Of a stretch of 64,000 nt of DNA, positions 7,388 through 34,943 are shown one piece after another. Position numbers and translations under genes: made by a program. The stretch is taken from assembly GCF_000143415.4 (NCBI RefSeq), contig NW_003314390.1:272973-336972 (forward strand). The letters run 5' to 3'. The notes below the pieces were generated by a model. The model worked only from the letters and a program-made list of their open reading frames with translations, did not search any database and was not told the DNA's origin. How positions within the stretch are numbered: the stretch's first letter is position 1; every line of letters starts with the position of its first letter. The stretch comes from Selaginella moellendorffii (taxonomy: Eukaryota; Plantae; Lycopodiophyta).

Positions 7388-9605
7388 GGAAGATGAAAAA
7401 GGTGATAGTAATAAATTAGGTAGAATATCTAAAGTTTTTGTTGGACAATTGTAAACTACCACAAGAATCTAAAACTCCCATAAAACCACTAACAAAGTTG
7501 CTAACAACTATGACTGAAATAAAACTTGAAGCCATGGTATAAGCATTAGTCAACTATGGAATCTTGATGAACCAGTTGTAACTTCATATACTACTGCCAA
7601 ATGCTTAAACCACCTTGAAGCCATAACTTTAAACAAAAGCAAGGGACTTCGAGAGCCACTATAGTCCATGAAATATTATTACAACAAATAATATATCTTG
7701 TATTTAAGTTTGTTTGTTGATAATTCTCCGAGACCACTATTAATTCGAACTCACAACCATAAGTAGAATCAGCCTCATCTTCTAACTCACAACTATAAAT
7801 AGAACCTACCTTTTTATCTTTGTTTAACACTGCATATGGAAAATCGGACTCACTCCATTTGTCTTCCACATCCTCTTTATCCCTTCTTTGATGGAAAAAA
7901 AAAGTTTTAAAACACTAGCTTTATTCAAACTTGCTACACTTATCCTTACTTCACCATTTATATTTAGCCTCACTCCACTATTACATTTGTTCAGCTTCAC
8001 TCTATCTAGGTTAGATGTTCCGTTCGAACTTGTTATGCTCATCTTCACTTTACAATCTATATCATTTATCCTCACTCCACTACAGTATTTGCTTATCCTC
8101 ATTCCATTGTCGGAGCTAGACTCTCATGCGTCCCCTCTACCCCCTCCTTTGAAGAATTTTTTTTTGAAGTGTTAAGGCAAAAAGGAAAAAAGGAAAAAAT
8201 GAGAAAAATTAAGGAAAAATAATTGTAGAAGAAGAAAAAATGGATAAAGAAGCATTAGAATAGGAATTTGTAGTAGTTGGGAATGCAGAAATGGGGAAAT
8301 TAAAAGGACATGTGCTTAAAGTTTGGAAAATAGAAGACTTCTTATCATAAAATATTTCACCCACTATAAGCAAAAGATTCACACCGCTCAACCTCCTTAA
8401 CACATAACTCAACATTTAAAATGGGAAAATCAATAATAATGTCCACACTCTTAAAGCAATACATAAACTCATTAACAATAACGATAAAGTAAAGGCTTTT
8501 ATTAGCACTCACAACTAGGGACATTCATTGAACTTAAAGCTTTGACCAAAGTGAGTCAACCCTTGGAATAGGGGAATATTTAATACTAGAACTAATTAAT
8601 GACTTTGTTAACGAAACAAAAGCAAGATTCTTAACTTCATGCATATAATTAACATTCAAATTAATATGAGGAGGACAGAAAACACTCAACTCATCATTGA
8701 ACTGAAAATGAAAATCATAAGAGTCAGAAATGAATAATGTGCTAGGAAAAGAAGATGTTGCAAACAAAGAAGGAACACTAGCAACATGAAAAAATGGCCT
8801 AAGCTGAGAAATAAGAAAGGATTGGGAAAGAGCAAAAGATAAGGGGAAAAGATCAGATGGCATTTTGAAGGATTGACACCTATCTTGTGAAATCTTCATT
8901 TCATTTCCAAAGTTATTTTCATAATAATTAAGTTCCTCATCATAATCTGAAATCCATTTAAGATCGTAAACATTGTTTTCCCATAAACTTGATCCTCAAA
9001 TATTCTAGACTACATCATATATAACTCGCTAATCGGTGTCATGATCATACTTCACATCAATGGGAGATGGCAAAACATCAAAAATAGGACAATCGATGTA
9101 ATCACATCCTACAGAAGTTGGAGATGGCAATACACCAAAGATTGGGTGTAACACTAATATAATTATATCTCACAACACCAAAAATTCAATTTAATAGAGT
9201 AACATTAGTAGCCTCAAATAACATATTCCTTGATTGATGACGATATAGCATGGTAGGAGAAGAGAATGCAATGAAGATTAAAATAAAGAATAAATCTAAG
9301 CACAATAATAGGTAAAATTCTAGATTTTACAAAAAGCTAATATAGACCTAAATCTAAAAAAGAATGAAGAAATAAGAACAAAAAGCATAATCCCAAATAC
9401 TAAAGCAAAGTATTGTTAAAAAAGCTTTGCTTTTTAGGGAAAAATTGTAGTATCCCTCACTAGTGGGTTTAGACCTTTACTTATATACAAAAATGGATAG
9501 ACCAGATTTAGTCTCAAATGGATGGTCTATATGCTATAGTACTATAATTAATATATTACTTAGTCAGGGTAATACATACATACATATATACACATGTATT
9601 TATAG
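7374..9605 (-). mobile_element. Degenerate internal region and second related LTR fragment
   Basis: 9463-9600 resembles 7217-7360 (GGGTTTA..CTTATATACAA..AATGGAT..ACCAGATT..CAAATGGA..ATATGCTATAGTACTATAATTA). The interior is AT-rich with imperfect tandem repeats (about 7930-8085 and 9060-9150) and no intact pol. Confidence 0.45.
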
Positions 9606-10969
9606 TCTAATCTTTTTGCTTGTGAATAAAAAACGGACAATAAGGACTCAGGAAACAAGCCACACTCGTGATAGCCTAAACACATGTTCTGGACTTAGTC
9701 ATCTGCTAGCCAAAAATGGCATACACTATATTACAAATGGAGTTAGCATGACTAGCCTACTAAAAAAATTAAGCTCTTCATACAAACTCTTGAATTGAAT
9801 CAACACCAGTTTTGGGCTGATCTCCTAGTGTTCTTTTGCTAACTTTCTCTTGTCTTGCATTTTAGATTCATATTCTTAGCCTACAGTCTTGACAATTGCT
9901 ATGATGAGAAGTCATCCATGATCATATCATTGGCATAATCAAAATCCCTCAAATGCTCTCAATTTCTAAGTTGACAAAGTCGAAGGGGAGTGTGAAGTCC
10001 TTCTCAAGGTGGGGTTGGCATTATCTAGATGTTACCATATAACAAAATAATCTAAAATTGACAATATATGATTTTAAACTATGGTTGTTTGTCTTTGATT
10101 ATTATTTTGACTTATTTTTATTAGTGTAAGGTTTCAAATTCAAGTCACACTCTTGCTCCATCTGGTCAAAAGCTTGATGCTTTTGGTTGATCGTACAAAA
10201 TATATTATGCTGCAACCAAAATAGATCAAATTGAATGTAGTAATCACCTTTCACAACATCAGTGAAAGATGACATTGAAAACTTCATCACAAAGCACTCT
10301 CAATTCTGCAAACTAGTGCAAATTAGATCTCTAATGCATCCTTGCCACTCTTGCTGGCTACAAATGTGACTTGTCAATGGGCTGCACAATCTTCACCTCA
10401 ATTACCACCAATTGTCACTTCCATTGGTTGTAAAGTAAGGCTAAAACTTTCCAAATGCTATTGCTCTCTGAGTAGAACCTAGTGCTGTCTATGTAGGGTC
10501 GTCCACTGCTGCTTTCCACATGCGCATACACTTGAGAATGGAAGCAGGCAAAAGACTTGTGCCACCAGCTCCAGCATCAATTCCAGTGTCGACCTCCCTA
10601 AACTTGTAATTAATACTACTGTCAAGTAAAGGTAAAGGTATAGTACCTCCAATCTCCATTGTTTGTTATTGCCTATAGATTCCACCACATTCATTTTAAC
10701 ATTTGTTGACTCCTTTGTGCTCTGATTGTTTAGCCTTTTGGCAATGAAAACAATTGCCATCCATAATAATATATTTTTAAAAAAAAATTGGTGATACATT
10801 AAACTCAGTTCTACTTTCTAAGATCTTCAGGCTGTTTGTGCTGTGGGTTTTCTCAGGTTGCAGCAAATAGTTGTTGGCTTCTTTGCTCAGCATACTTTTT
10901 CTCACTAGGCTTTGCTTTGGTTGTTTTTCGTTTTCCACCAGGTGGAGATCGAGTATGATGTAAAACTCT

Positions 10970-30186: not shown

Positions 30187-32068
30187 TTAAAATCCGGGGC
30201 TGAAAGCATGGAACCTCCAGTAGACAAGGCGCGCCCTGGCGCCTCTCAAGGAGCTCCACTGCTTGCAAGCGATGGCCTCGGTCGCACTCTCGACGCTGGT
30301 GAATTCCACCAGAGCTTCCCTCCGCTTCCTCCCCTCCCTCGCCTGCGACACCTCCACCTTGACGATCACACCATGCTCCGCGAAGTGCCTCACCACGTCC
30401 ACCTCTTGGATGTCCGGCACCAGGTTGGAGGCGTGGATCACCTTGGTCGGGGGGCAGCACTTCTTGGCATACGCGTACAGGAACCGGTTCCCAGTCCCCC
30501 AGCTGTAGAAATGCGTGTGAGGGTGCCGCAAGCATGAGTGATCTGATAGAGTGATCTCCATTTTCTTTCCAAACAGTGAAACTCCCTGCAACCACGCTTC
30601 AGCAGTGACAAGCACAAGCTAAACTCGACAGCTCTTGATACCTTGAGGCAGGCCATCGCAAGGTCCGCTTGGAAGCCGTCGCTCATCTGTACCAGTGCGA
30701 GCTCTGGTTTCACAAAGGAGCCTTTGATTCGCAGGACATTTCCGTAGACCGAGAAGAGGTTGTACAGCTTGTGCTCGTTTATCATCTGCAAGCCACAAGC
30801 CACGGCATTCAAGCTGTTCAGTCCAACGTAGTTAAAGGACCGCTGAGACGATCTCATACCCGCGTGTTTAGATTCGAGAGGAGCAGCACGCAGCGCTGGT
30901 TCGTTGTTGGACCTGAAGGCAACAGCCCGGAATTCCCTGGCTTGTAGCACAGCAAGACAAAAACGTATCAAACTCTGTACCGACATCGGACACCGGGTTT
31001 CATCAGGTGAACGTTTCCTGCGCCGAGAATGGACGGAAACCTTGCACTTGGCAAAGAACTGTTTGTGAAGTCTCTGCCAGAAAAGAACCACCAGATATAC
31101 ATGACTGGGAGAAAAGAAAACCGGAACGTAGTACCTGGAAAGATCGTTATTGCATGCCACACGAACTTCGTCGGTCCTGGAAACGGGAGAAAGTGTAAGT
31201 GCGAGTGACTAGAAAGGTACAAACTCACCTTGAGTATTGGATTTCCATAGTGCACGACCCGTTCAAGATCTTGCTTTTGTGGAGACGATGCTTGGCTTCA
31301 CGAGCATCTCGTGGAGAAGCGTACTGGATGAGTGCCTGCGCAAGCACTGTGGAAGAAAGACATGAAAAGCCGCTATGAAACGAGGCAGGCCTACCAGTTG
31401 ACTGAGGAAAGATGGCAATCTTCTCGATGGGCCCGAAACTCTTGAAGGTCTGATGGAGGGCATCCACGGTAACGTGACATACCGAGTCTAGCATCGTCAC
31501 TAGAAGGATTGCGCTGCATGTTTCCTGAGCTTGGCACTCTTTAGCAAGAAAAAGAAAGCAAAGTGGTCGACTACCTCGGCCGGATAGAGCTCTTTACGAG
31601 CAGAGAACTGAATGGAAACGTCCCTCCCCCTGAGAAGAGATCTCAGTTACGAGCGAAAAGGAGAATGCGAGCACTCCCACCTTACGGTTGCCTGGCGCGA
31701 TGCAAAGTGCCGGATGACTAGAAAGGCCTTGGCGATATCTTGCATTTGAACAAAAGCCTTTCACAGCGAGAGAAACAGTGAGCAAGAAAGAAGCTCTCAC
31801 TCGCTTACTTGATTCCATGTCCTCAAGAGAACAATGCCGCTGACTCTTCCAAATGGGCGAACAAGCTCCACAAGATCGTCCTAGGTAGGAAAAACAAACG
31901 ATTCTTCTTCTTGCGACAATCCGATCGATCTCTTCTACTCACCTCGGCCACATCCTGCGCCAGGTTGCGGAGATGGAGCACCTTGCAGGGGGAAGGATTT
32001 GGGAGCTCGGGCTCGCGAGGATACGCGCCGCAAGCAAAGCGATGGTAGCAGCGCCTGGGACGAAGCAT
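30187..32068 (-). CDS. Divergent PTB3/hnRNP-L-like 4-RRM protein, copy A
   Basis: KVLHLRNL, VTVDALHQTFKSFGPIEKI, CTMEIQYS, KLYNLFSVYGNVLRIK, ALVQMSDGFQADLA, CCPPTKVIHASNL, EALVEF. Confidence 0.85.
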
Positions 32069-32107
32069 TCCCCCTTTAAAGCCTTTAAAACATACCTTTT
32101 GCTGTGG

Positions 32108-32131
32108 TTTAGGGTTTATCGATTAGGGTTT
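32108..32131. promoter_or_regulatory. Two telo-boxes in the 89-bp bidirectional promoter
   Basis: TAGGGTTT occurs twice between the divergent ATGs. Confidence 0.6.
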
Positions 32132-32157
32132 AAGGGTTATGTAGAGAGGGGCGAAGA

Positions 32158-34090
32158 ATGCACCAAGCTGCGTCGCGGCGCCTGCTCGCCAGGAGCGCAG
32201 ATCTCTTCTTCTCCAGGCGCTACTGCGCTTCCCCTGCCGCTGGCGCTCTAGAATCCAAATCGCTCGACGAGAATGGATCAAAGCTCGAGCTGGAGCCGTC
32301 CAAGGTCTTACATTTTCGCAATCTCACGCCATACATAAGACGGGTGAGCGGTCTAGATCGCAAAAAAGAAGAGAACATAAGGATTTCGGATTTGTTTTGC
32401 CAGGGTGAGCTTGAGAAACTGGTTCGTCCTTTTGGAAGCGTGACGAGTTACCGATTGACGACAAGGACTCAGGTGTGTACTTGTCAACAGAGAAGCTCAA
32501 ATGATCGTTTCGTGTCTTTCTTCCAGGCGCTCTTGGAGATGAAAAATGTGAAGCAGGCTAAGAAGGTCGTTGATCACTTTTCCTCGGCAAAGGCACTCGT
32601 GAAGTAAGTCATTTTTGTCTCCTTTTCCGTTCGTTCCAATTGCGTGAAAACAGAAAAACAGAAGTCTATGTTGGATTCTCACGGTTTCAAGAGCTAGAAA
32701 AGGATGTGTCCCGTCTAGCTGATCCGGTTCGTGCTAGACGTATAGCGTAAAGCCACCTAAAATCCAAACATTCTTTTGCAGAAACAAGGCGCGAGCAGCA
32801 AAGTCCTTGCAGTGACTGTTACCAATCCAATTTATCCCATCGACGTGTATGTGCTGCACAGGGTGTTCTGCCCCCATGGCAGCGTTGAGAAGATAACCAT
32901 CTCCCGCAAGCTTGGTAAGTTTGTATCACACTTCCGCGTGACGTCTTATGGAATCTATTCGCGTGCAGGTATTTGCGGGTACATACAATTCGATTCCGTA
33001 AAAACTGCTGCTCACGTCAAAGATCTTCTCAATGATCGTCACATTTTCGATGGTTGCTGTAAGATGGAAATACAATATGCCAAGTGTGTGCCTTGTCTGT
33101 TTCTTCACTTCATCCTTTCTAATCGATAATGTTTTTTTAAGGTCCCAGGAACTTGGAGTGTATTTTAATGATGACAACAACAGGTAGAGAACTCCACGCC
33201 AGGCCCAAGCTCTCAGGCTAATCGTTTCTGTGCAGGGACTTCAAGGACACTTCCATTCCTTCAAGAGTACGGAGCGATCCATCGATTCTGGGTGCTCCGC
33301 CCGTTGAAAGTGTACCGGCACTGACTGCAGAGGACGCGGCCGCTGGAGCACCAGCCGTTGTTCCCACGCCTTTCATCGGCCGGCGGAAGCGGGTTGTGCG
33401 CGTGTCCAACTTGAACGTCGAGGTAATCTTCTCCTTCTGGAAGTTCGGCTGATTCATGTGCTTGGACTTGCAGAAAGTTGATGAGGACAAGCTCTTCAAT
33501 CTTTTTTCTCCATATGGAAAGATAAGAAAGGTGCAGGTGATAAAAGTCACCGGTCAGGGCCTGATAGAGATGAGTGACGCGTTTCAAGCGGAACTGGCGT
33601 CAGCCTGTCTCAAGGTAACTTCCTCCCTTTATGGAGACATGTTCAAAACTAACGTCGGCTAGCATGGCTACAGGGTGCGCGGGTTTTCGAGAAAGAACTG
33701 GACACTGTGGTTGTAGACAAGGAGCTTAATCTCAACCAGAGCCGGGACTACACAGACGCGCACGACAACATTTTCTTTCCCAGCTTTGTGAGAAACTGTC
33801 GCGGTCCCTCGCCAACAATTTACGTGTGGGGACTCCCTTCAGGTGTCACCGATGCAGAGCTCATCACTCACTTTTCCCCGCATGGCGAGATAGCTGCCAC
33901 TGAGGTGTTTGCATCCGAGGAAGGGAAGCCGCGAGCACGAGTTCGATTTGATACCAAAGAACAAGCAACCGAAGCTGTCGCTTGCAAGCAGTACAGCGTT
34001 GTCAATGGCTCCACGATCCGGCTCGCCTTTGCGATCAATGGGAAACCAAAGAAAACGTCCAGCAGTAACGCAGCGGAGGCTGGAGACTAG
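32158..34090 (+). CDS. Divergent PTB3/hnRNP-L-like 4-RRM protein, copy B
   Basis: EPSKVLHFRNL, YPIDVYVLHRVFCPHGSVEKI, IFDGCCKMEIQY, DEDKLFNLFSPYG, EMSDAFQAELA, EQATEAVACK, IRLAF. Confidence 0.85.
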
Positions 34091-34318
34091 CCGAAAGAGA
34101 AAGAGGTACTTCCAAGCTTTCATAAATTCAACGTGTGGACTAAACCATACCAATGACCATTTCTCCTTGGTTGCAGATGTCAACGTTTCTCTCTTGCCTT
34201 CGACAGAGAAGCTGCGAATTGGAACTTTCTACGATTATGCATCACTGTGATGTCCATTTTTGACTTCGCGCAGATTAAAAGGTGTATGTTTCGGCGCACA
34301 GCCATCCGAGAGTTTGCC

Positions 34319-34943
34319 ATGGAGGGACAATCATCAAAGTATCTGATGGCTTGGCTTTTGATAGTAACGGTCGAGCTCCACTTCTTGGCAGCGGGGTGTC
34401 GGCTGCTAGAGCACGAGATCCCTTCTCGGGCAGTCGTGGAAGTTTCGGTCTATTGCGAGATTTGCCACGAAGGGCGCAGCATCAAGAACATAGCACTGCC
34501 TGGTCCGTACTATCTCCATCTCTATAAGTTCCTGTCGATGATCACCAGTTCTAGTGGAGTTTACATTCTCGGCATGGTTTGATCCAGGTGTTGTTGCGTT
34601 CCTGGAGTGCAATGGTGCTCGTGTCAGTGGCAGTAGCACCACGGACTCGTCCGGGAAATGGTCGGTGGATGTTCCCAGCGGCTACAACTTGGAGAGGGAT
34701 TGCCGGGTGTCCGTGCTCGAGCGCCCAAGTGGCTGTGGCTTATCGCCGGCCTCCAGCTCCATGCCAGACGTGAGACCGATCATACGAACGAGCAGCGATG
34801 GCAGCAGATTTGCCGCGGCCGAGCCTTTCGTTTACAACTCTCGCGATTGTGGCGAGAATGCGTATCGCCCAAGAAGCGCTCGCGCTCTTGCGGCCTCCAC
34901 GAATGCACTCAGCCTTGGGCCCCCGGATCCACCGCGGCCTTAG
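34319..34943 (+). CDS. Pollen Ole e 1-family secreted protein, 2 exons
   Basis: Signal peptide, VEVSVYCEIC, LPG|VVAFLEC, TDSSGKW, CRVSVLERPSGC. Confidence 0.75.

What the first reader, a model, noticed from the sequence alone, without database searches (positions are those of the whole stretch)
30187..34090. Head-to-head PTB3/hnRNP-L-like paralogs, both with mitochondrial-type presequences
Seen: two highly diverged 4-RRM genes have ATGs 89 bp apart and share a spacer with two telo-boxes. Each carries an unrelated Arg-rich, acid-poor N-terminal extension before RRM1: MHQAASRRLLARSADLFFSRRYCAS (an R-x-Y-type cleavage-like site) and MLRPRRCYHRFACG. Known: plant PTB3 starts only a few residues before RRM1, PTBs are nucleo-cytoplasmic splicing regulators, and lycophyte organelles have very heavy C-to-U editing and complex introns. 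Inference: this may be a co-regulated, possibly heterodimeric pair of PTB derivatives re-targeted to mitochondria for splicing, editing or RNA stability. I know of no described organellar PTB class.
Basis: partly seen in the sequence, partly recalled or inferred. Interest (0 to 1): 0.8.

Follow-up and report, generated by a model that had tools for sequence, protein, structure and literature searches.

The report
Spikemoss PTB3 offshoots with import-like heads
Two back-to-back spikemoss genes belong to a trio of fast-changing copies of the RNA-binding protein PTB3 whose new front ends look like signals for import into mitochondria, which would be a first for this family, but import was not tested.

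Summary
Window 30187-34090 (Selaginella moellendorffii) carries two intact, divergently transcribed 4-RRM PTB3-type genes. Their ATGs are 89 bp apart, with two telo-boxes in the spacer. Both are transcribed and spliced in runs from four studies, and the assembled transcripts include both ATGs. Comparing the two haplotypes gives pN/pS of about 0.2, so neither gene is decaying.

New here:
- A normal PTB3 (starting MTEPSKV, 70% identical to a clubmoss PTB3) exists elsewhere in the genome.
- A third diverged paralog lies 16 kb from that normal gene. It carries a roughly 39-50 aa N-terminal exon that looks like an organellar presequence, with an exact RxF|AT cleavage motif.
- The three diverged genes form one clade inside vascular-plant PTB3, on branches 8-20 times longer than normal. 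All three have lost the ancestral start codon and begin upstream.

Limits:
- The plus-gene extension is presequence-like. The minus-gene extension is short and weak, and two of four runs assemble its mRNA with a retained intron that stops the frame after RRM2.
- No localisation predictor or experiment was available. Retargeting to an organelle is plausible (about 0.5), not shown.
- Nothing supports a heterodimer.

Verdict: a new variant of a known family. The scan had not noted it before.

The parts
32158..34090 (+). Plus gene CDS, 10 exons, 479 aa (XP_024521608.1, 'PTB homolog 3 isoform X1'). Exons: 32158-32343, 32404-32472, 32527-32603, 32654-32726, 32782-32914, 32969-33083, 33142-33183, 33236-33422, 33474-33614, 33674-34090.
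   Evidence: model; splice joints in RNA contigs; identical to P0001.
30187..32068 (-). Minus gene CDS, 11 exons, 434-440 aa depending on the linker intron (XP_024521602.1, 'isoform X3'). Exons, high to low: 32068-31943, 31880-31809, 31757-31681, 31629-31575, 31524-31395, 31346-31229, 31176-31135, 31073-30994 (NCBI model: to 30985), 30936 (NCBI model: 30912)-30860, 30785-30642, 30585-30187.
32069..32157 (.). 89-bp spacer between the two ATGs; acts as a compact bidirectional promoter plus both short 5'UTRs. The minus-gene contig reaches 32093. Plus-gene contigs start at 32125, 32128 and 32135.
   Evidence: The other haplotype matches at 87 of 89 bases.
32110..32117 (-). Telo-box 1 (AAACCCTA).
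   Evidence: kept in the other haplotype.
32124..32131 (-). Telo-box 2 (AAACCCTA), at the 5' end of the plus-gene contigs.
32158..32295 (+). Plus-gene N-terminal extension (codons 1-46). Codons 1-22 are Arg-rich (5 R, 0 K, 1 D) and end in RRY|CAS. Codons 23-46 form an acidic linker. The ancestral start position now reads GAG CTG GAG CCG TCC AAG.
   Evidence: pLDDT about 30 over residues 1-42.
31988..32068 (-). Minus-gene N-terminal extension (codons 1-27). The first 17 residues carry 4 R, 1 H and no acidic residue; PREPELPNPSP follows.
32305..32343 (+). 39 nt removed when the alternative donor at 32304|32305 is used (isoform X2, 466 aa). This deletes VLHFRNLTPYIRR, the first strand of RRM1.
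   Evidence: the 32302->32402 joint in runs X2 and X8, while the X1 contig runs on to 32342. P0273 and P0274.
30913..30993 (-). Linker intron of the minus gene (30937-30993 in my model, 30913-30984 in the NCBI model). It is retained in the contigs of runs X1 and X7. Retention brings an in-frame TGA at 30968-30970, giving a 241-aa RRM1-RRM2 product.
   Evidence: (continuous pieces 30860-31073).
34106..34176 (+). 71-nt intron in the plus-gene 3'UTR, starting 15 nt after the stop codon. It is spliced in all four runs.
32139..32144 (+). ATG-TAG minimal upstream ORF in the plus-gene 5'UTR.
   Evidence: conserved in the other haplotype.
32085..32093 (-). ATG-TTT-TAA upstream ORF at the far end of the minus-gene 5'UTR contig.

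Best explanation
SHOWN. The locus holds two of three members of a Selaginella moellendorffii-specific, very fast-evolving offshoot of the plant PTB3 family. The normal PTB3 gene is retained on another scaffold. A nearby duplicate, the third paralog (XP_024534018.1), lies 16 kb downstream of it. The window pair sits in a segment that looks paralogous to that one, since an ABC-transporter gene follows in both places. All three offshoots have lost the ancestral start (MTEPSKV) and start at an upstream ATG, so each protein must carry an N-terminal extension. Both window genes are transcribed from a spacer in which the assembled transcript ends lie at most about 31 bp apart. Both are spliced, keep four RRM folds, and are under purifying selection.

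INFERRED. The extension works as an organellar import signal, mitochondrial more likely than plastid. The evidence is strongest for the third paralog: about 39 residues on their own exon, ending RCF|ATT. It is good for the plus gene: 22 residues, net charge +4, an amphipathic stretch at residues 8-18, ending RRY|C. It is weak for the minus gene, which may have kept only the tail of the signal. After retargeting, the proteins would bind pyrimidine-rich organellar RNA instead of nuclear pre-mRNA, which would explain why half of the PTB3-invariant residues have been replaced. The telo-box spacer is an inherited PTB3-type promoter that an inverted duplication made bidirectional.
For: Identity and family:
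- P0001 and P0002 are the window's proteins. Their best outside matches are plant PTB3 at only 34-42% identity.
- Normal S. moellendorffii PTB3 (P0405/P0349) is 70% identical to Diphasiastrum PTB3.

Tree:
- The three diverged proteins form one clade (support 70/71) next to the normal Selaginella PTB3 (40/37), inside tracheophyte PTB3 (99/96).
- Their end branches are 3.9, 2.2 and 1.5, against a median of 0.1.
- They keep only 51-64% of the 219 columns that are at least 90% conserved in PTB3, and they share three derived residues.

Lost start codon:
- The plus gene reads GAG at the old ATG. In the third paralog the old ATG sits at the 3' end of intron 1.
- 214 of about 240 PTB3 proteins start 4 residues before SKV.

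Expression and 5' ends:
- Splice joints appear in runs from four studies. The contigs include both ATGs, and each ATG is the first in frame.

Constraint:
- pN/pS is 0.23 for plus and 0.18 for minus; pooled binomial p = 5.6e-5.

Presequence features:
- Arg only and no Lys, net charge +4, first acidic residue at position 15, 19 or 30, and hydrophobic moment 0.63-0.67.
- Net charge this high occurs in only 3-3.5% of internal PTB windows of the same length.
- P0203 fits the plant motif RX(F/Y)|(S/A)(S/T). Arabidopsis presequences span 7-117 aa, with mean net charge +5.6 (PMC4986872).
- Plus-protein residues 1-42 are predicted disordered and detached from the RRMs.

Precedent:
- RB47, a chloroplast protein of the poly(A)-binding-protein family (PMC2133045; that it has four RRMs is from my own knowledge).
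Against: - No localisation predictor, proteome or import assay could be consulted, so the central step rests on inference from sequence features.
- The extensions are GC-rich (0.62-0.65, against 0.56 for the rest of the CDS). Arg/Ala richness could simply follow from translating a former 5'UTR.
- The plus extension has an Asp at position 15, a Cys at +1 of the proposed cleavage site, and S6P and A11V differences between haplotypes.
- The minus extension is short, contains prolines and has no clean motif.
- AlphaFold2 predicts no helix in the extension.
- No ortholog from another species is available to test conservation. There is nothing between 46% and 94% identity among 5.8 billion clusters or 1.84 billion representatives.
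- Similarity of the extensions to one another is not significant at the protein level.
- Long-branch artefacts may affect the tree.
Confidence: 0.5

Rival explanations
1. The genes are nucleo-cytoplasmic PTB3 paralogs with new or split functions, for example tissue-specific or antagonistic splicing or mRNA regulators. On this view the N-terminal extension is a neutral by-product of losing the old start codon and reading a GC-rich former 5'UTR, or it acts as a basic nuclear-import patch, as the N-terminal region does in animal PTB.
For: - The GC-rich extension gives an Arg bias for free.
- The extensions differ between haplotypes and paralogs.
- The minus extension is not a convincing presequence.
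- Arabidopsis PTB1-3 are nuclear and P-body proteins (PMC4030149).
- The alternative splicing seen here recalls PTB autoregulation through unproductive isoforms (PMC10914923). One isoform lacks the first strand of RRM1. Another retains an intron carrying a premature stop.
Against: - Three paralogs all carry acid-poor, Arg-only N-termini.
- The third paralog's extension is a full-length presequence with an exact -3R cleavage motif on a dedicated exon.
- None of the extensions has a classical K/R-rich nuclear signal.
- The normal PTB3 is retained, so the nuclear role is already covered.
- Replacement of about half of the PTB3-invariant residues while purifying selection continues fits a change of RNA targets.
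Confidence: 0.33
2. The proteins are organelle-targeted, but to plastids or to both organelles rather than to mitochondria.
For: - The third paralog's extension is 26-31% Ser+Thr.
- Dual-targeted Arabidopsis proteins show nearly the same cleavage motif, RX(F/L)|(S/A)(S/T/V/A), as mitochondrial ones (PMC4986872).
Against: - Arg residues lie within the first 8-12 positions.
- The putative signals are short (22 and 39 residues), whereas Arabidopsis transit peptides average 56 residues.
- The plus extension has only 14% Ser+Thr.
Confidence: 0.15
3. The genes are decaying duplicates. On this view the long branches reflect loss of constraint, and the pair is on its way to becoming pseudogenes.
For: - The branches are extremely long, and half of the invariant residues are lost.
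- The minus-gene contigs in two runs carry a premature stop through intron retention.
Against: - Both ORFs are intact in both haplotypes.
- pN/pS is about 0.2, with p = 5.6e-5.
- Four RRMs fold with high confidence.
- Both genes are expressed in four independent studies.
Confidence: 0.04
4. The two proteins act as an obligate heterodimer encoded by a co-regulated gene pair.
For: - The two genes share a promoter of 89 bp or less.
- Plus-gene contig depth is about 4-6 times the minus-gene depth in all four runs. The tool itself warns that this depth measure is poor.
Against:
- The third paralog stands alone with no partner gene beside it.
- The arrangement is explained well enough by an inverted duplication of a gene together with its promoter.
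Confidence: 0.08

Closest known systems
Plant PTB3 (Arabidopsis At1g43190; S. moellendorffii XP_024534073.1)
   Same: Same four-RRM order and the same Pfam signature (RRM_8 on RRM2, RRM_5 on RRM3). The diverged genes nest inside the tracheophyte PTB3 clade, and a telo-box lies just upstream of the start in each.
   Different: - Only 34-46% identical, whereas normal PTB3 proteins are 65-75% identical across all land plants.
- Only 51-64% of PTB3-invariant positions are kept.
- The ancestral start codon is lost.
- They carry a 27-49 residue N-terminal extension that no other surveyed PTB3 has.
Third diverged S. moellendorffii paralog, XP_024534018.1 (P0203)
   Same: It falls in the same fast-evolving clade and has also lost the start codon and gained an upstream start. 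It has a telo-box about 65-75 nt upstream of its ATG and an ABC-transporter gene downstream, as the window locus does.
   Different: It is a single gene, not part of a head-to-head pair. Its presequence lies on a separate first exon, is longer and richer in Ser/Thr, and has an exact RxF|AT motif. It is less diverged from PTB3 (43-45% identical).
Chlamydomonas RB47 (chloroplast poly(A)-binding protein)
   Same: It is a precedent for an RBP family that is normally cytosolic or nuclear working inside an organelle (PMC2133045; that RB47 has four RRMs is from my own knowledge).
   Different: It belongs to a different RRM family (PABP) in a different lineage. Its organellar localisation and function are shown experimentally, whereas here they are only inferred.
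Plant organellar RRM proteins (ORRM, cpRNP, mitochondrial glycine-rich RBPs); this comparison is from my own knowledge and was not tested here
   Same: They combine RRM domains with an N-terminal transit peptide and act on organellar RNA editing, splicing or stability.
   Different: They have one or two canonical RRMs and are unrelated to PTB. They are conserved across land plants or seed plants, not confined to one lineage.

Membership tests
PTB / hnRNP-L family, plant PTB3 subgroup | Four RRMs in PTB order, with the atypical RRM2 (Pfam RRM_8) and RRM3 (Pfam RRM_5). | tested here: met
   Pfam hits lie above the curated cut-offs in P0001, P0002 and P0203. AlphaFold2 gives four RRM folds at pLDDT 85-97.
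PTB / hnRNP-L family, plant PTB3 subgroup | Phylogenetic placement inside PTB3. | tested here: met
   The proteins fall inside the tracheophyte PTB3 clade with 99/96 support. Their exact sister group is unresolved (40/37), and the long branches call for caution.
PTB / hnRNP-L family, plant PTB3 subgroup | N-terminus begins M-[TA]-E-P-S-K-V, that is, 4 residues before the first strand of RRM1. | tested here: not met
   214 of about 240 PTB3 proteins fit this pattern. The window proteins have 47 and 27 residues before the motif and no Met at the old start.
PTB / hnRNP-L family, plant PTB3 subgroup | Conservation of PTB3-invariant residues. | tested here: not met
   Of 219 columns that are at least 90% conserved, 111 (plus), 127 (minus) and 141 (third) are kept. 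This is about the level of a distant non-plant PTB (120).
Proteins with a cleavable mitochondrial presequence | N-terminal 7-117 residues, positively charged, nearly free of acidic residues, Arg-rich, able to form an amphipathic helix. | tested here: inconclusive
   Descriptive features fit: net charge +4, Arg only, hydrophobic moment 0.63-0.67. However, no calibrated predictor was available, AlphaFold2 shows no helix, and GC-rich coding could produce the bias.
Proteins with a cleavable mitochondrial presequence | -3R or -2R processing motif, RX(F/Y/L)|(S/A)(S/T). | tested here: inconclusive
   P0203 has RCF|ATT, an exact fit. The plus protein has RRY|CAS, with Cys at +1. The minus protein has only RCY|HR or RF|AC, a poor fit. 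The motif is taken from PMC4986872.
Proteins with a cleavable mitochondrial presequence | Demonstrated import and processing. | not testable with these tools
   This needs GFP fusions, in vitro import or organelle proteomics.
Bidirectional (head-to-head) gene pair | Divergent genes with starts less than 1 kb apart, both transcribed. | tested here: met
   The ATGs are 89 bp apart, and contig 5' ends lie at 32093 (minus) and 32125-32135 (plus). Both genes are spliced in four studies. The layout is conserved in the second haplotype.

The most novel reading that the evidence does not exclude
Selaginella evolved its own organellar PTB subfamily. Duplicates of the nuclear splicing regulator PTB3 gained an import signal by recruiting an upstream start in a former 5'UTR or 5' exon. 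They moved into mitochondria (or plastids) and were rebuilt to bind the pyrimidine-rich, heavily edited and intron-rich organellar transcripts of this plant. This would be the first PTB-type protein acting inside an organelle.
Probability: 0.4. Interest if true: 0.75.

Novelty: new variant of a known kind. Interest (0 to 1): 0.55.

Why it matters
S. moellendorffii mitochondria hold the plant record for introns (37 in 20 genes) and C-to-U editing (2,139 mRNA sites; PMC5654404). From my own knowledge, the known nuclear-encoded helpers are mostly PPR proteins. If the inference holds, a lineage-specific four-RRM protein family that binds pyrimidine tracts would have been sent into organelles. That would add a new class of organellar RNA factor. 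It would also give a clean, datable example of how a nuclear RNA regulator gains an import signal: the old start codon is lost and an upstream exon becomes coding. The case is directly testable with three short GFP fusions. If the inference fails, the finding is still a clear example of extreme rate acceleration in retained duplicates of a very conserved gene.

Tried and rejected
- Full spliced proteins could not be passed to the tools by reference. I therefore used an alignment of the last exons of both genes for the one exhaustive search, which returned the full-length records.
- Exact look-ups of P0349 and P0352 found no contig. Isoform X1 (P0405) did.
- Extension homology gave mixed results. 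Short colinear DNA matches around the ATG (plus vs third: 16 of 1000 shuffles reach the score) and at CCAGGCGCT (plus vs minus: 11 of 1000) are suggestive. Protein-level alignments are not significant (119, 1721 and 486 of 2000). No similarity to the 5'UTR exon of the normal PTB3 was found.
- I tried the neighbouring PPR gene's N-terminus as a positive control for presequence features. As annotated, it does not look like a presequence, so it is no use as a control.
- AlphaFold2 gave no helix for the extension, so it provides no structural support.
- No sequence from another Selaginella species appears in any collection searched. Conservation of the extension and of the head-to-head layout beyond the two haplotypes could therefore not be tested.
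- The strong match of the plus RRM4 to yeast Pab1 RRM4 is not a domain swap. The normal PTB3 RRM4 also hits Pab1, and the plus RRM4 aligns along its whole length with PTB3 RRM4.
- The old JGI model that fuses the plus gene to downstream ORFs (P0271, 695 aa) is rejected. RNA contigs splice a 3'UTR intron that starts 15 nt after the stop codon.
Full report
**What is there**

The window comes from the spikemoss Selaginella moellendorffii. Earlier notes said so, and the NCBI names of the encoded proteins confirm it.

I built both gene models by hand from GT-AG introns of 48-76 nt and checked them against RNA contigs.
- **Plus gene:** 32158-34090, 10 exons. It encodes 479 aa and is identical to XP_024521608.1 (P0001).
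- **Minus gene:** 32068-30187, 11 exons. It encodes 434-440 aa, depending on how one linker intron is drawn. XP_024521602.1 (P0002) is the 434-aa form.
- **Spacer:** 89 bp separate the two ATGs. AAACCCTA occurs on the minus strand at 32110-17 and 32124-31. The window holds 12 such boxes against 1.5 expected.
- **Domains:** Pfam finds RRM_8, RRM_5 and RRM_1 in both proteins. AlphaFold2 folds four RRMs in the plus protein at pLDDT 85-97, while residues 1-42 score about 30.
- **Relatedness:** the two proteins are 36% identical and share intron positions and phases.

**Are the ATGs and extensions real?**

- An in-frame TAA lies 27 nt upstream of the plus ATG and 57 nt upstream of the minus ATG, with no ATG between.
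- RNA contigs from four runs of four studies show the predicted splice joints. Plus-gene contigs begin at 32125, 32128 and 32135, and a minus-gene contig reaches 32093. Both ATGs therefore lie inside the assembled transcripts, and the two transcript ends are at most about 31 bp apart.
- Contigs cannot fix true transcription starts, so CAGE or 5'RACE is still needed.
- Among about 240 plant PTB3 proteins fetched here, 214 have exactly four residues before the SKV motif of RRM1. The few longer ones keep an internal M[AT]EPSKV, which points to mis-called starts. Only the Selaginella paralogs lack that Met.
- DNA alignment with the normal PTB3 gene shows that the plus gene reads GAG CTG GAG CCG TCC AAG where the ancestor had ATG ACG GAG CCG TCC AAG.

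The extension is therefore obligatory. No in-frame Met precedes RRM1 (the next Met lies inside it), so no later start gives a complete RRM1.

**Family context**

The exhaustive HMMER search found no relative between the two window proteins (267 and 257 bits) and the next PTB-like hit (116 bits). The word searches agree.

That next hit is an old partial model of a third S. moellendorffii gene, XP_024534018.1 (P0203, 465 aa). Three points stand out.
- Its first 49 residues precede the SKV motif. They carry five Arg, no Lys, and a single acidic residue at position 30. They are 31% Ser+Thr and end in RCF|ATT.
- That ending is an exact fit to the plant -3R motif RX(F/Y)|(S/A)(S/T) (PMC4986872).
- This segment lies on its own exon (L002 8002-8141). 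The old ATG survives at the 3' end of the intron that follows.

A normal PTB3 also exists: XP_024534073/4 (P0405/P0349). It starts MTEPSKV and is 70% identical to Diphasiastrum PTB3. It lies only 16 kb upstream of the third paralog, on the same strand, with two PPR genes between them.

An ABC-transporter gene follows the third paralog. One also follows the window pair, after a Kelch gene. This suggests a segmental duplication.

**Phylogeny and rates**

I built an LG+C20 tree of 22 PTB3 proteins.
- The three diverged proteins form one clade (support 70/71), next to the normal Selaginella PTB3 (40/37).
- All of them lie inside tracheophyte PTB3 (99/96).
- End branches are 3.9 (plus), 2.2 (minus) and 1.5 (third), against a median of 0.1.
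- The program warns about meeting long branches and odd amino-acid composition, so the internal order is uncertain.

They keep only 51%, 58% and 64% of the 219 columns that are at least 90% conserved among normal PTB3. They share three derived residues at such columns.

Even so, comparison with the second haplotype (L001) gives pN/pS of 0.23 for plus (9 nonsynonymous, 12 synonymous changes) and 0.18 for minus (3 and 5). The pooled binomial p is 5.6e-5. The spacer matches at 87 of 89 positions and keeps both telo-boxes. These are working genes that changed fast and are now constrained.

**The targeting question**

Descriptive features of the extensions:

| Protein | Putative signal | Arg | Acidic residues | Amphipathic stretch / other | Candidate cleavage site |
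|---|---|---|---|---|---|
| Plus | residues 1-22 | 5 | one Asp, at position 15 | residues 8-18 (moment 0.67) | RRY\|CAS |
| Minus | residues 1-17 | 4 (plus 1 His) | none | two prolines | none clean |
| Third | residues 1-39 | 5 | one, at position 30 | residues 8-18 (moment 0.66) | RCF\|ATT |

Net charge is +4 in each case. Only 3-3.5% of internal PTB windows of the same length reach that value. Arabidopsis presequences span 7-117 residues and average +5.6, so these fall within range but are short.

Four points count against a presequence reading:
- The coding DNA is GC-rich (0.62-0.65), which by itself favours Arg and Ala.
- AlphaFold2 predicts no helix in the extension.
- The plus haplotypes differ by S6P and A11V.
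- Similarity among the three extensions is weak. The short DNA matches are reached by 11-43 of 1000 shuffles, and protein-level alignments are not significant.

No predictor or localisation data were available. I put organellar targeting at about 0.55 for the plus protein, lower for the minus protein and higher for the third. The organelle itself remains undecided, with the mitochondrion more likely.

**Transcript isoforms**

- In two of the four runs, the plus gene is assembled with a donor at 32304 instead of 32343. This removes 13 residues that form the first strand of RRM1. It is NCBI isoform X2, 466 aa.
- In two runs, the minus-gene contigs are continuous over 30860-31073, so the linker intron is retained. 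That brings a TGA at 30968-30970 and a 241-aa RRM1-RRM2 product.
- Unproductive splice forms are a known way in which Arabidopsis PTB1 and PTB2 regulate themselves (PMC10914923). Contigs cannot give isoform proportions.

**Promoter**

Telo-boxes also lie just upstream of the normal PTB3 gene (L003, about 9690-9725) and of the third paralog (L002, about 7925-7940). The boxes in the shared spacer are therefore inherited PTB3 promoter elements. The head-to-head layout is best explained by an inverted duplication whose breakpoint lay just upstream of a short 5'UTR. Plus-gene contig depth is about 4-6 times the minus-gene depth in all four runs. The tool itself warns that this is a poor measure, so it is only weak support for co-regulation.

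**Comparison with what is known**

- Arabidopsis PTB1-3 are nuclear and P-body proteins (PMC4030149). PTB3 is the distant member and has no role in global splicing control (PMC10914923).
- Full-text searches found no organellar PTB.
- RB47, a chloroplast member of the poly(A)-binding-protein family, is a precedent for retargeting a cytosolic or nuclear RBP family (PMC2133045). That it has four RRMs is from my own knowledge.
- S. moellendorffii mitochondria have 37 introns and 2,139 mRNA editing sites (PMC5654404).

**Verdict**

Localisation remains untested, the case for the minus gene is weak, and the heterodimer idea has no support.
- This is a new variant of a known family. Interest is 0.55.

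Noticed in passing
window 34091-34500 and beyond; P0271: Plus-gene RNA contigs continue past the stop codon, through a 71-nt 3'UTR intron (34106-34176), for at least 700 nt. They run across small ORFs at 34247-34943 that have no Pfam match. An old JGI model (EFJ06786.1, 695 aa) fuses these ORFs to the PTB gene. This is either a very long 3'UTR or overlapping transcripts of a small unannotated gene.
   Followed up: partly
window 32139-32144 (+) and 32085-32093 (-): Both short 5'UTRs carry a tiny upstream ORF: ATG-TAG in the plus gene and ATG-TTT-TAA in the minus gene. The plus-gene one is conserved in the second haplotype.
   Followed up: no
L003 10001-12408, L002 1-7862 and L002 8001-10017 (GL377586.1:213285-233456): The normal PTB3 and the third diverged paralog lie 16 kb apart on the same strand, with two PPR genes (1758 and 691 aa) between them. 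The shorter PPR gene ends 138 bp before the paralog's ATG. ABC-transporter genes follow both this paralog and the window pair, which suggests a segmental duplication.
   Followed up: partly
window 33674-34087 (+), RRM4 of the plus gene: This RRM4 matches yeast Pab1 RRM4 (E = 1e-16) far better than it matches PTB RRM4 (E = 8e-4). The normal Selaginella PTB3 RRM4 still matches PTB best (E = 6e-10). It appears that the domain has drifted towards an ordinary RNP-type RRM, with aromatic residues in IYVWGL and RVRF.
   Followed up: partly
whole window: The telo-box AAACCCTA occurs 12 times against 1.5 expected from shuffles, so it is a common element of this gene-dense region and not peculiar to the PTB spacer.
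   Followed up: no
window 32604/32654: Contigs of runs X2 and X8 place the exon 3-4 joint one base off (listed as TA..GA). An A-to-G allele at 32654, which would be synonymous, explains this most simply. It was not checked against DNA reads.
   Followed up: no
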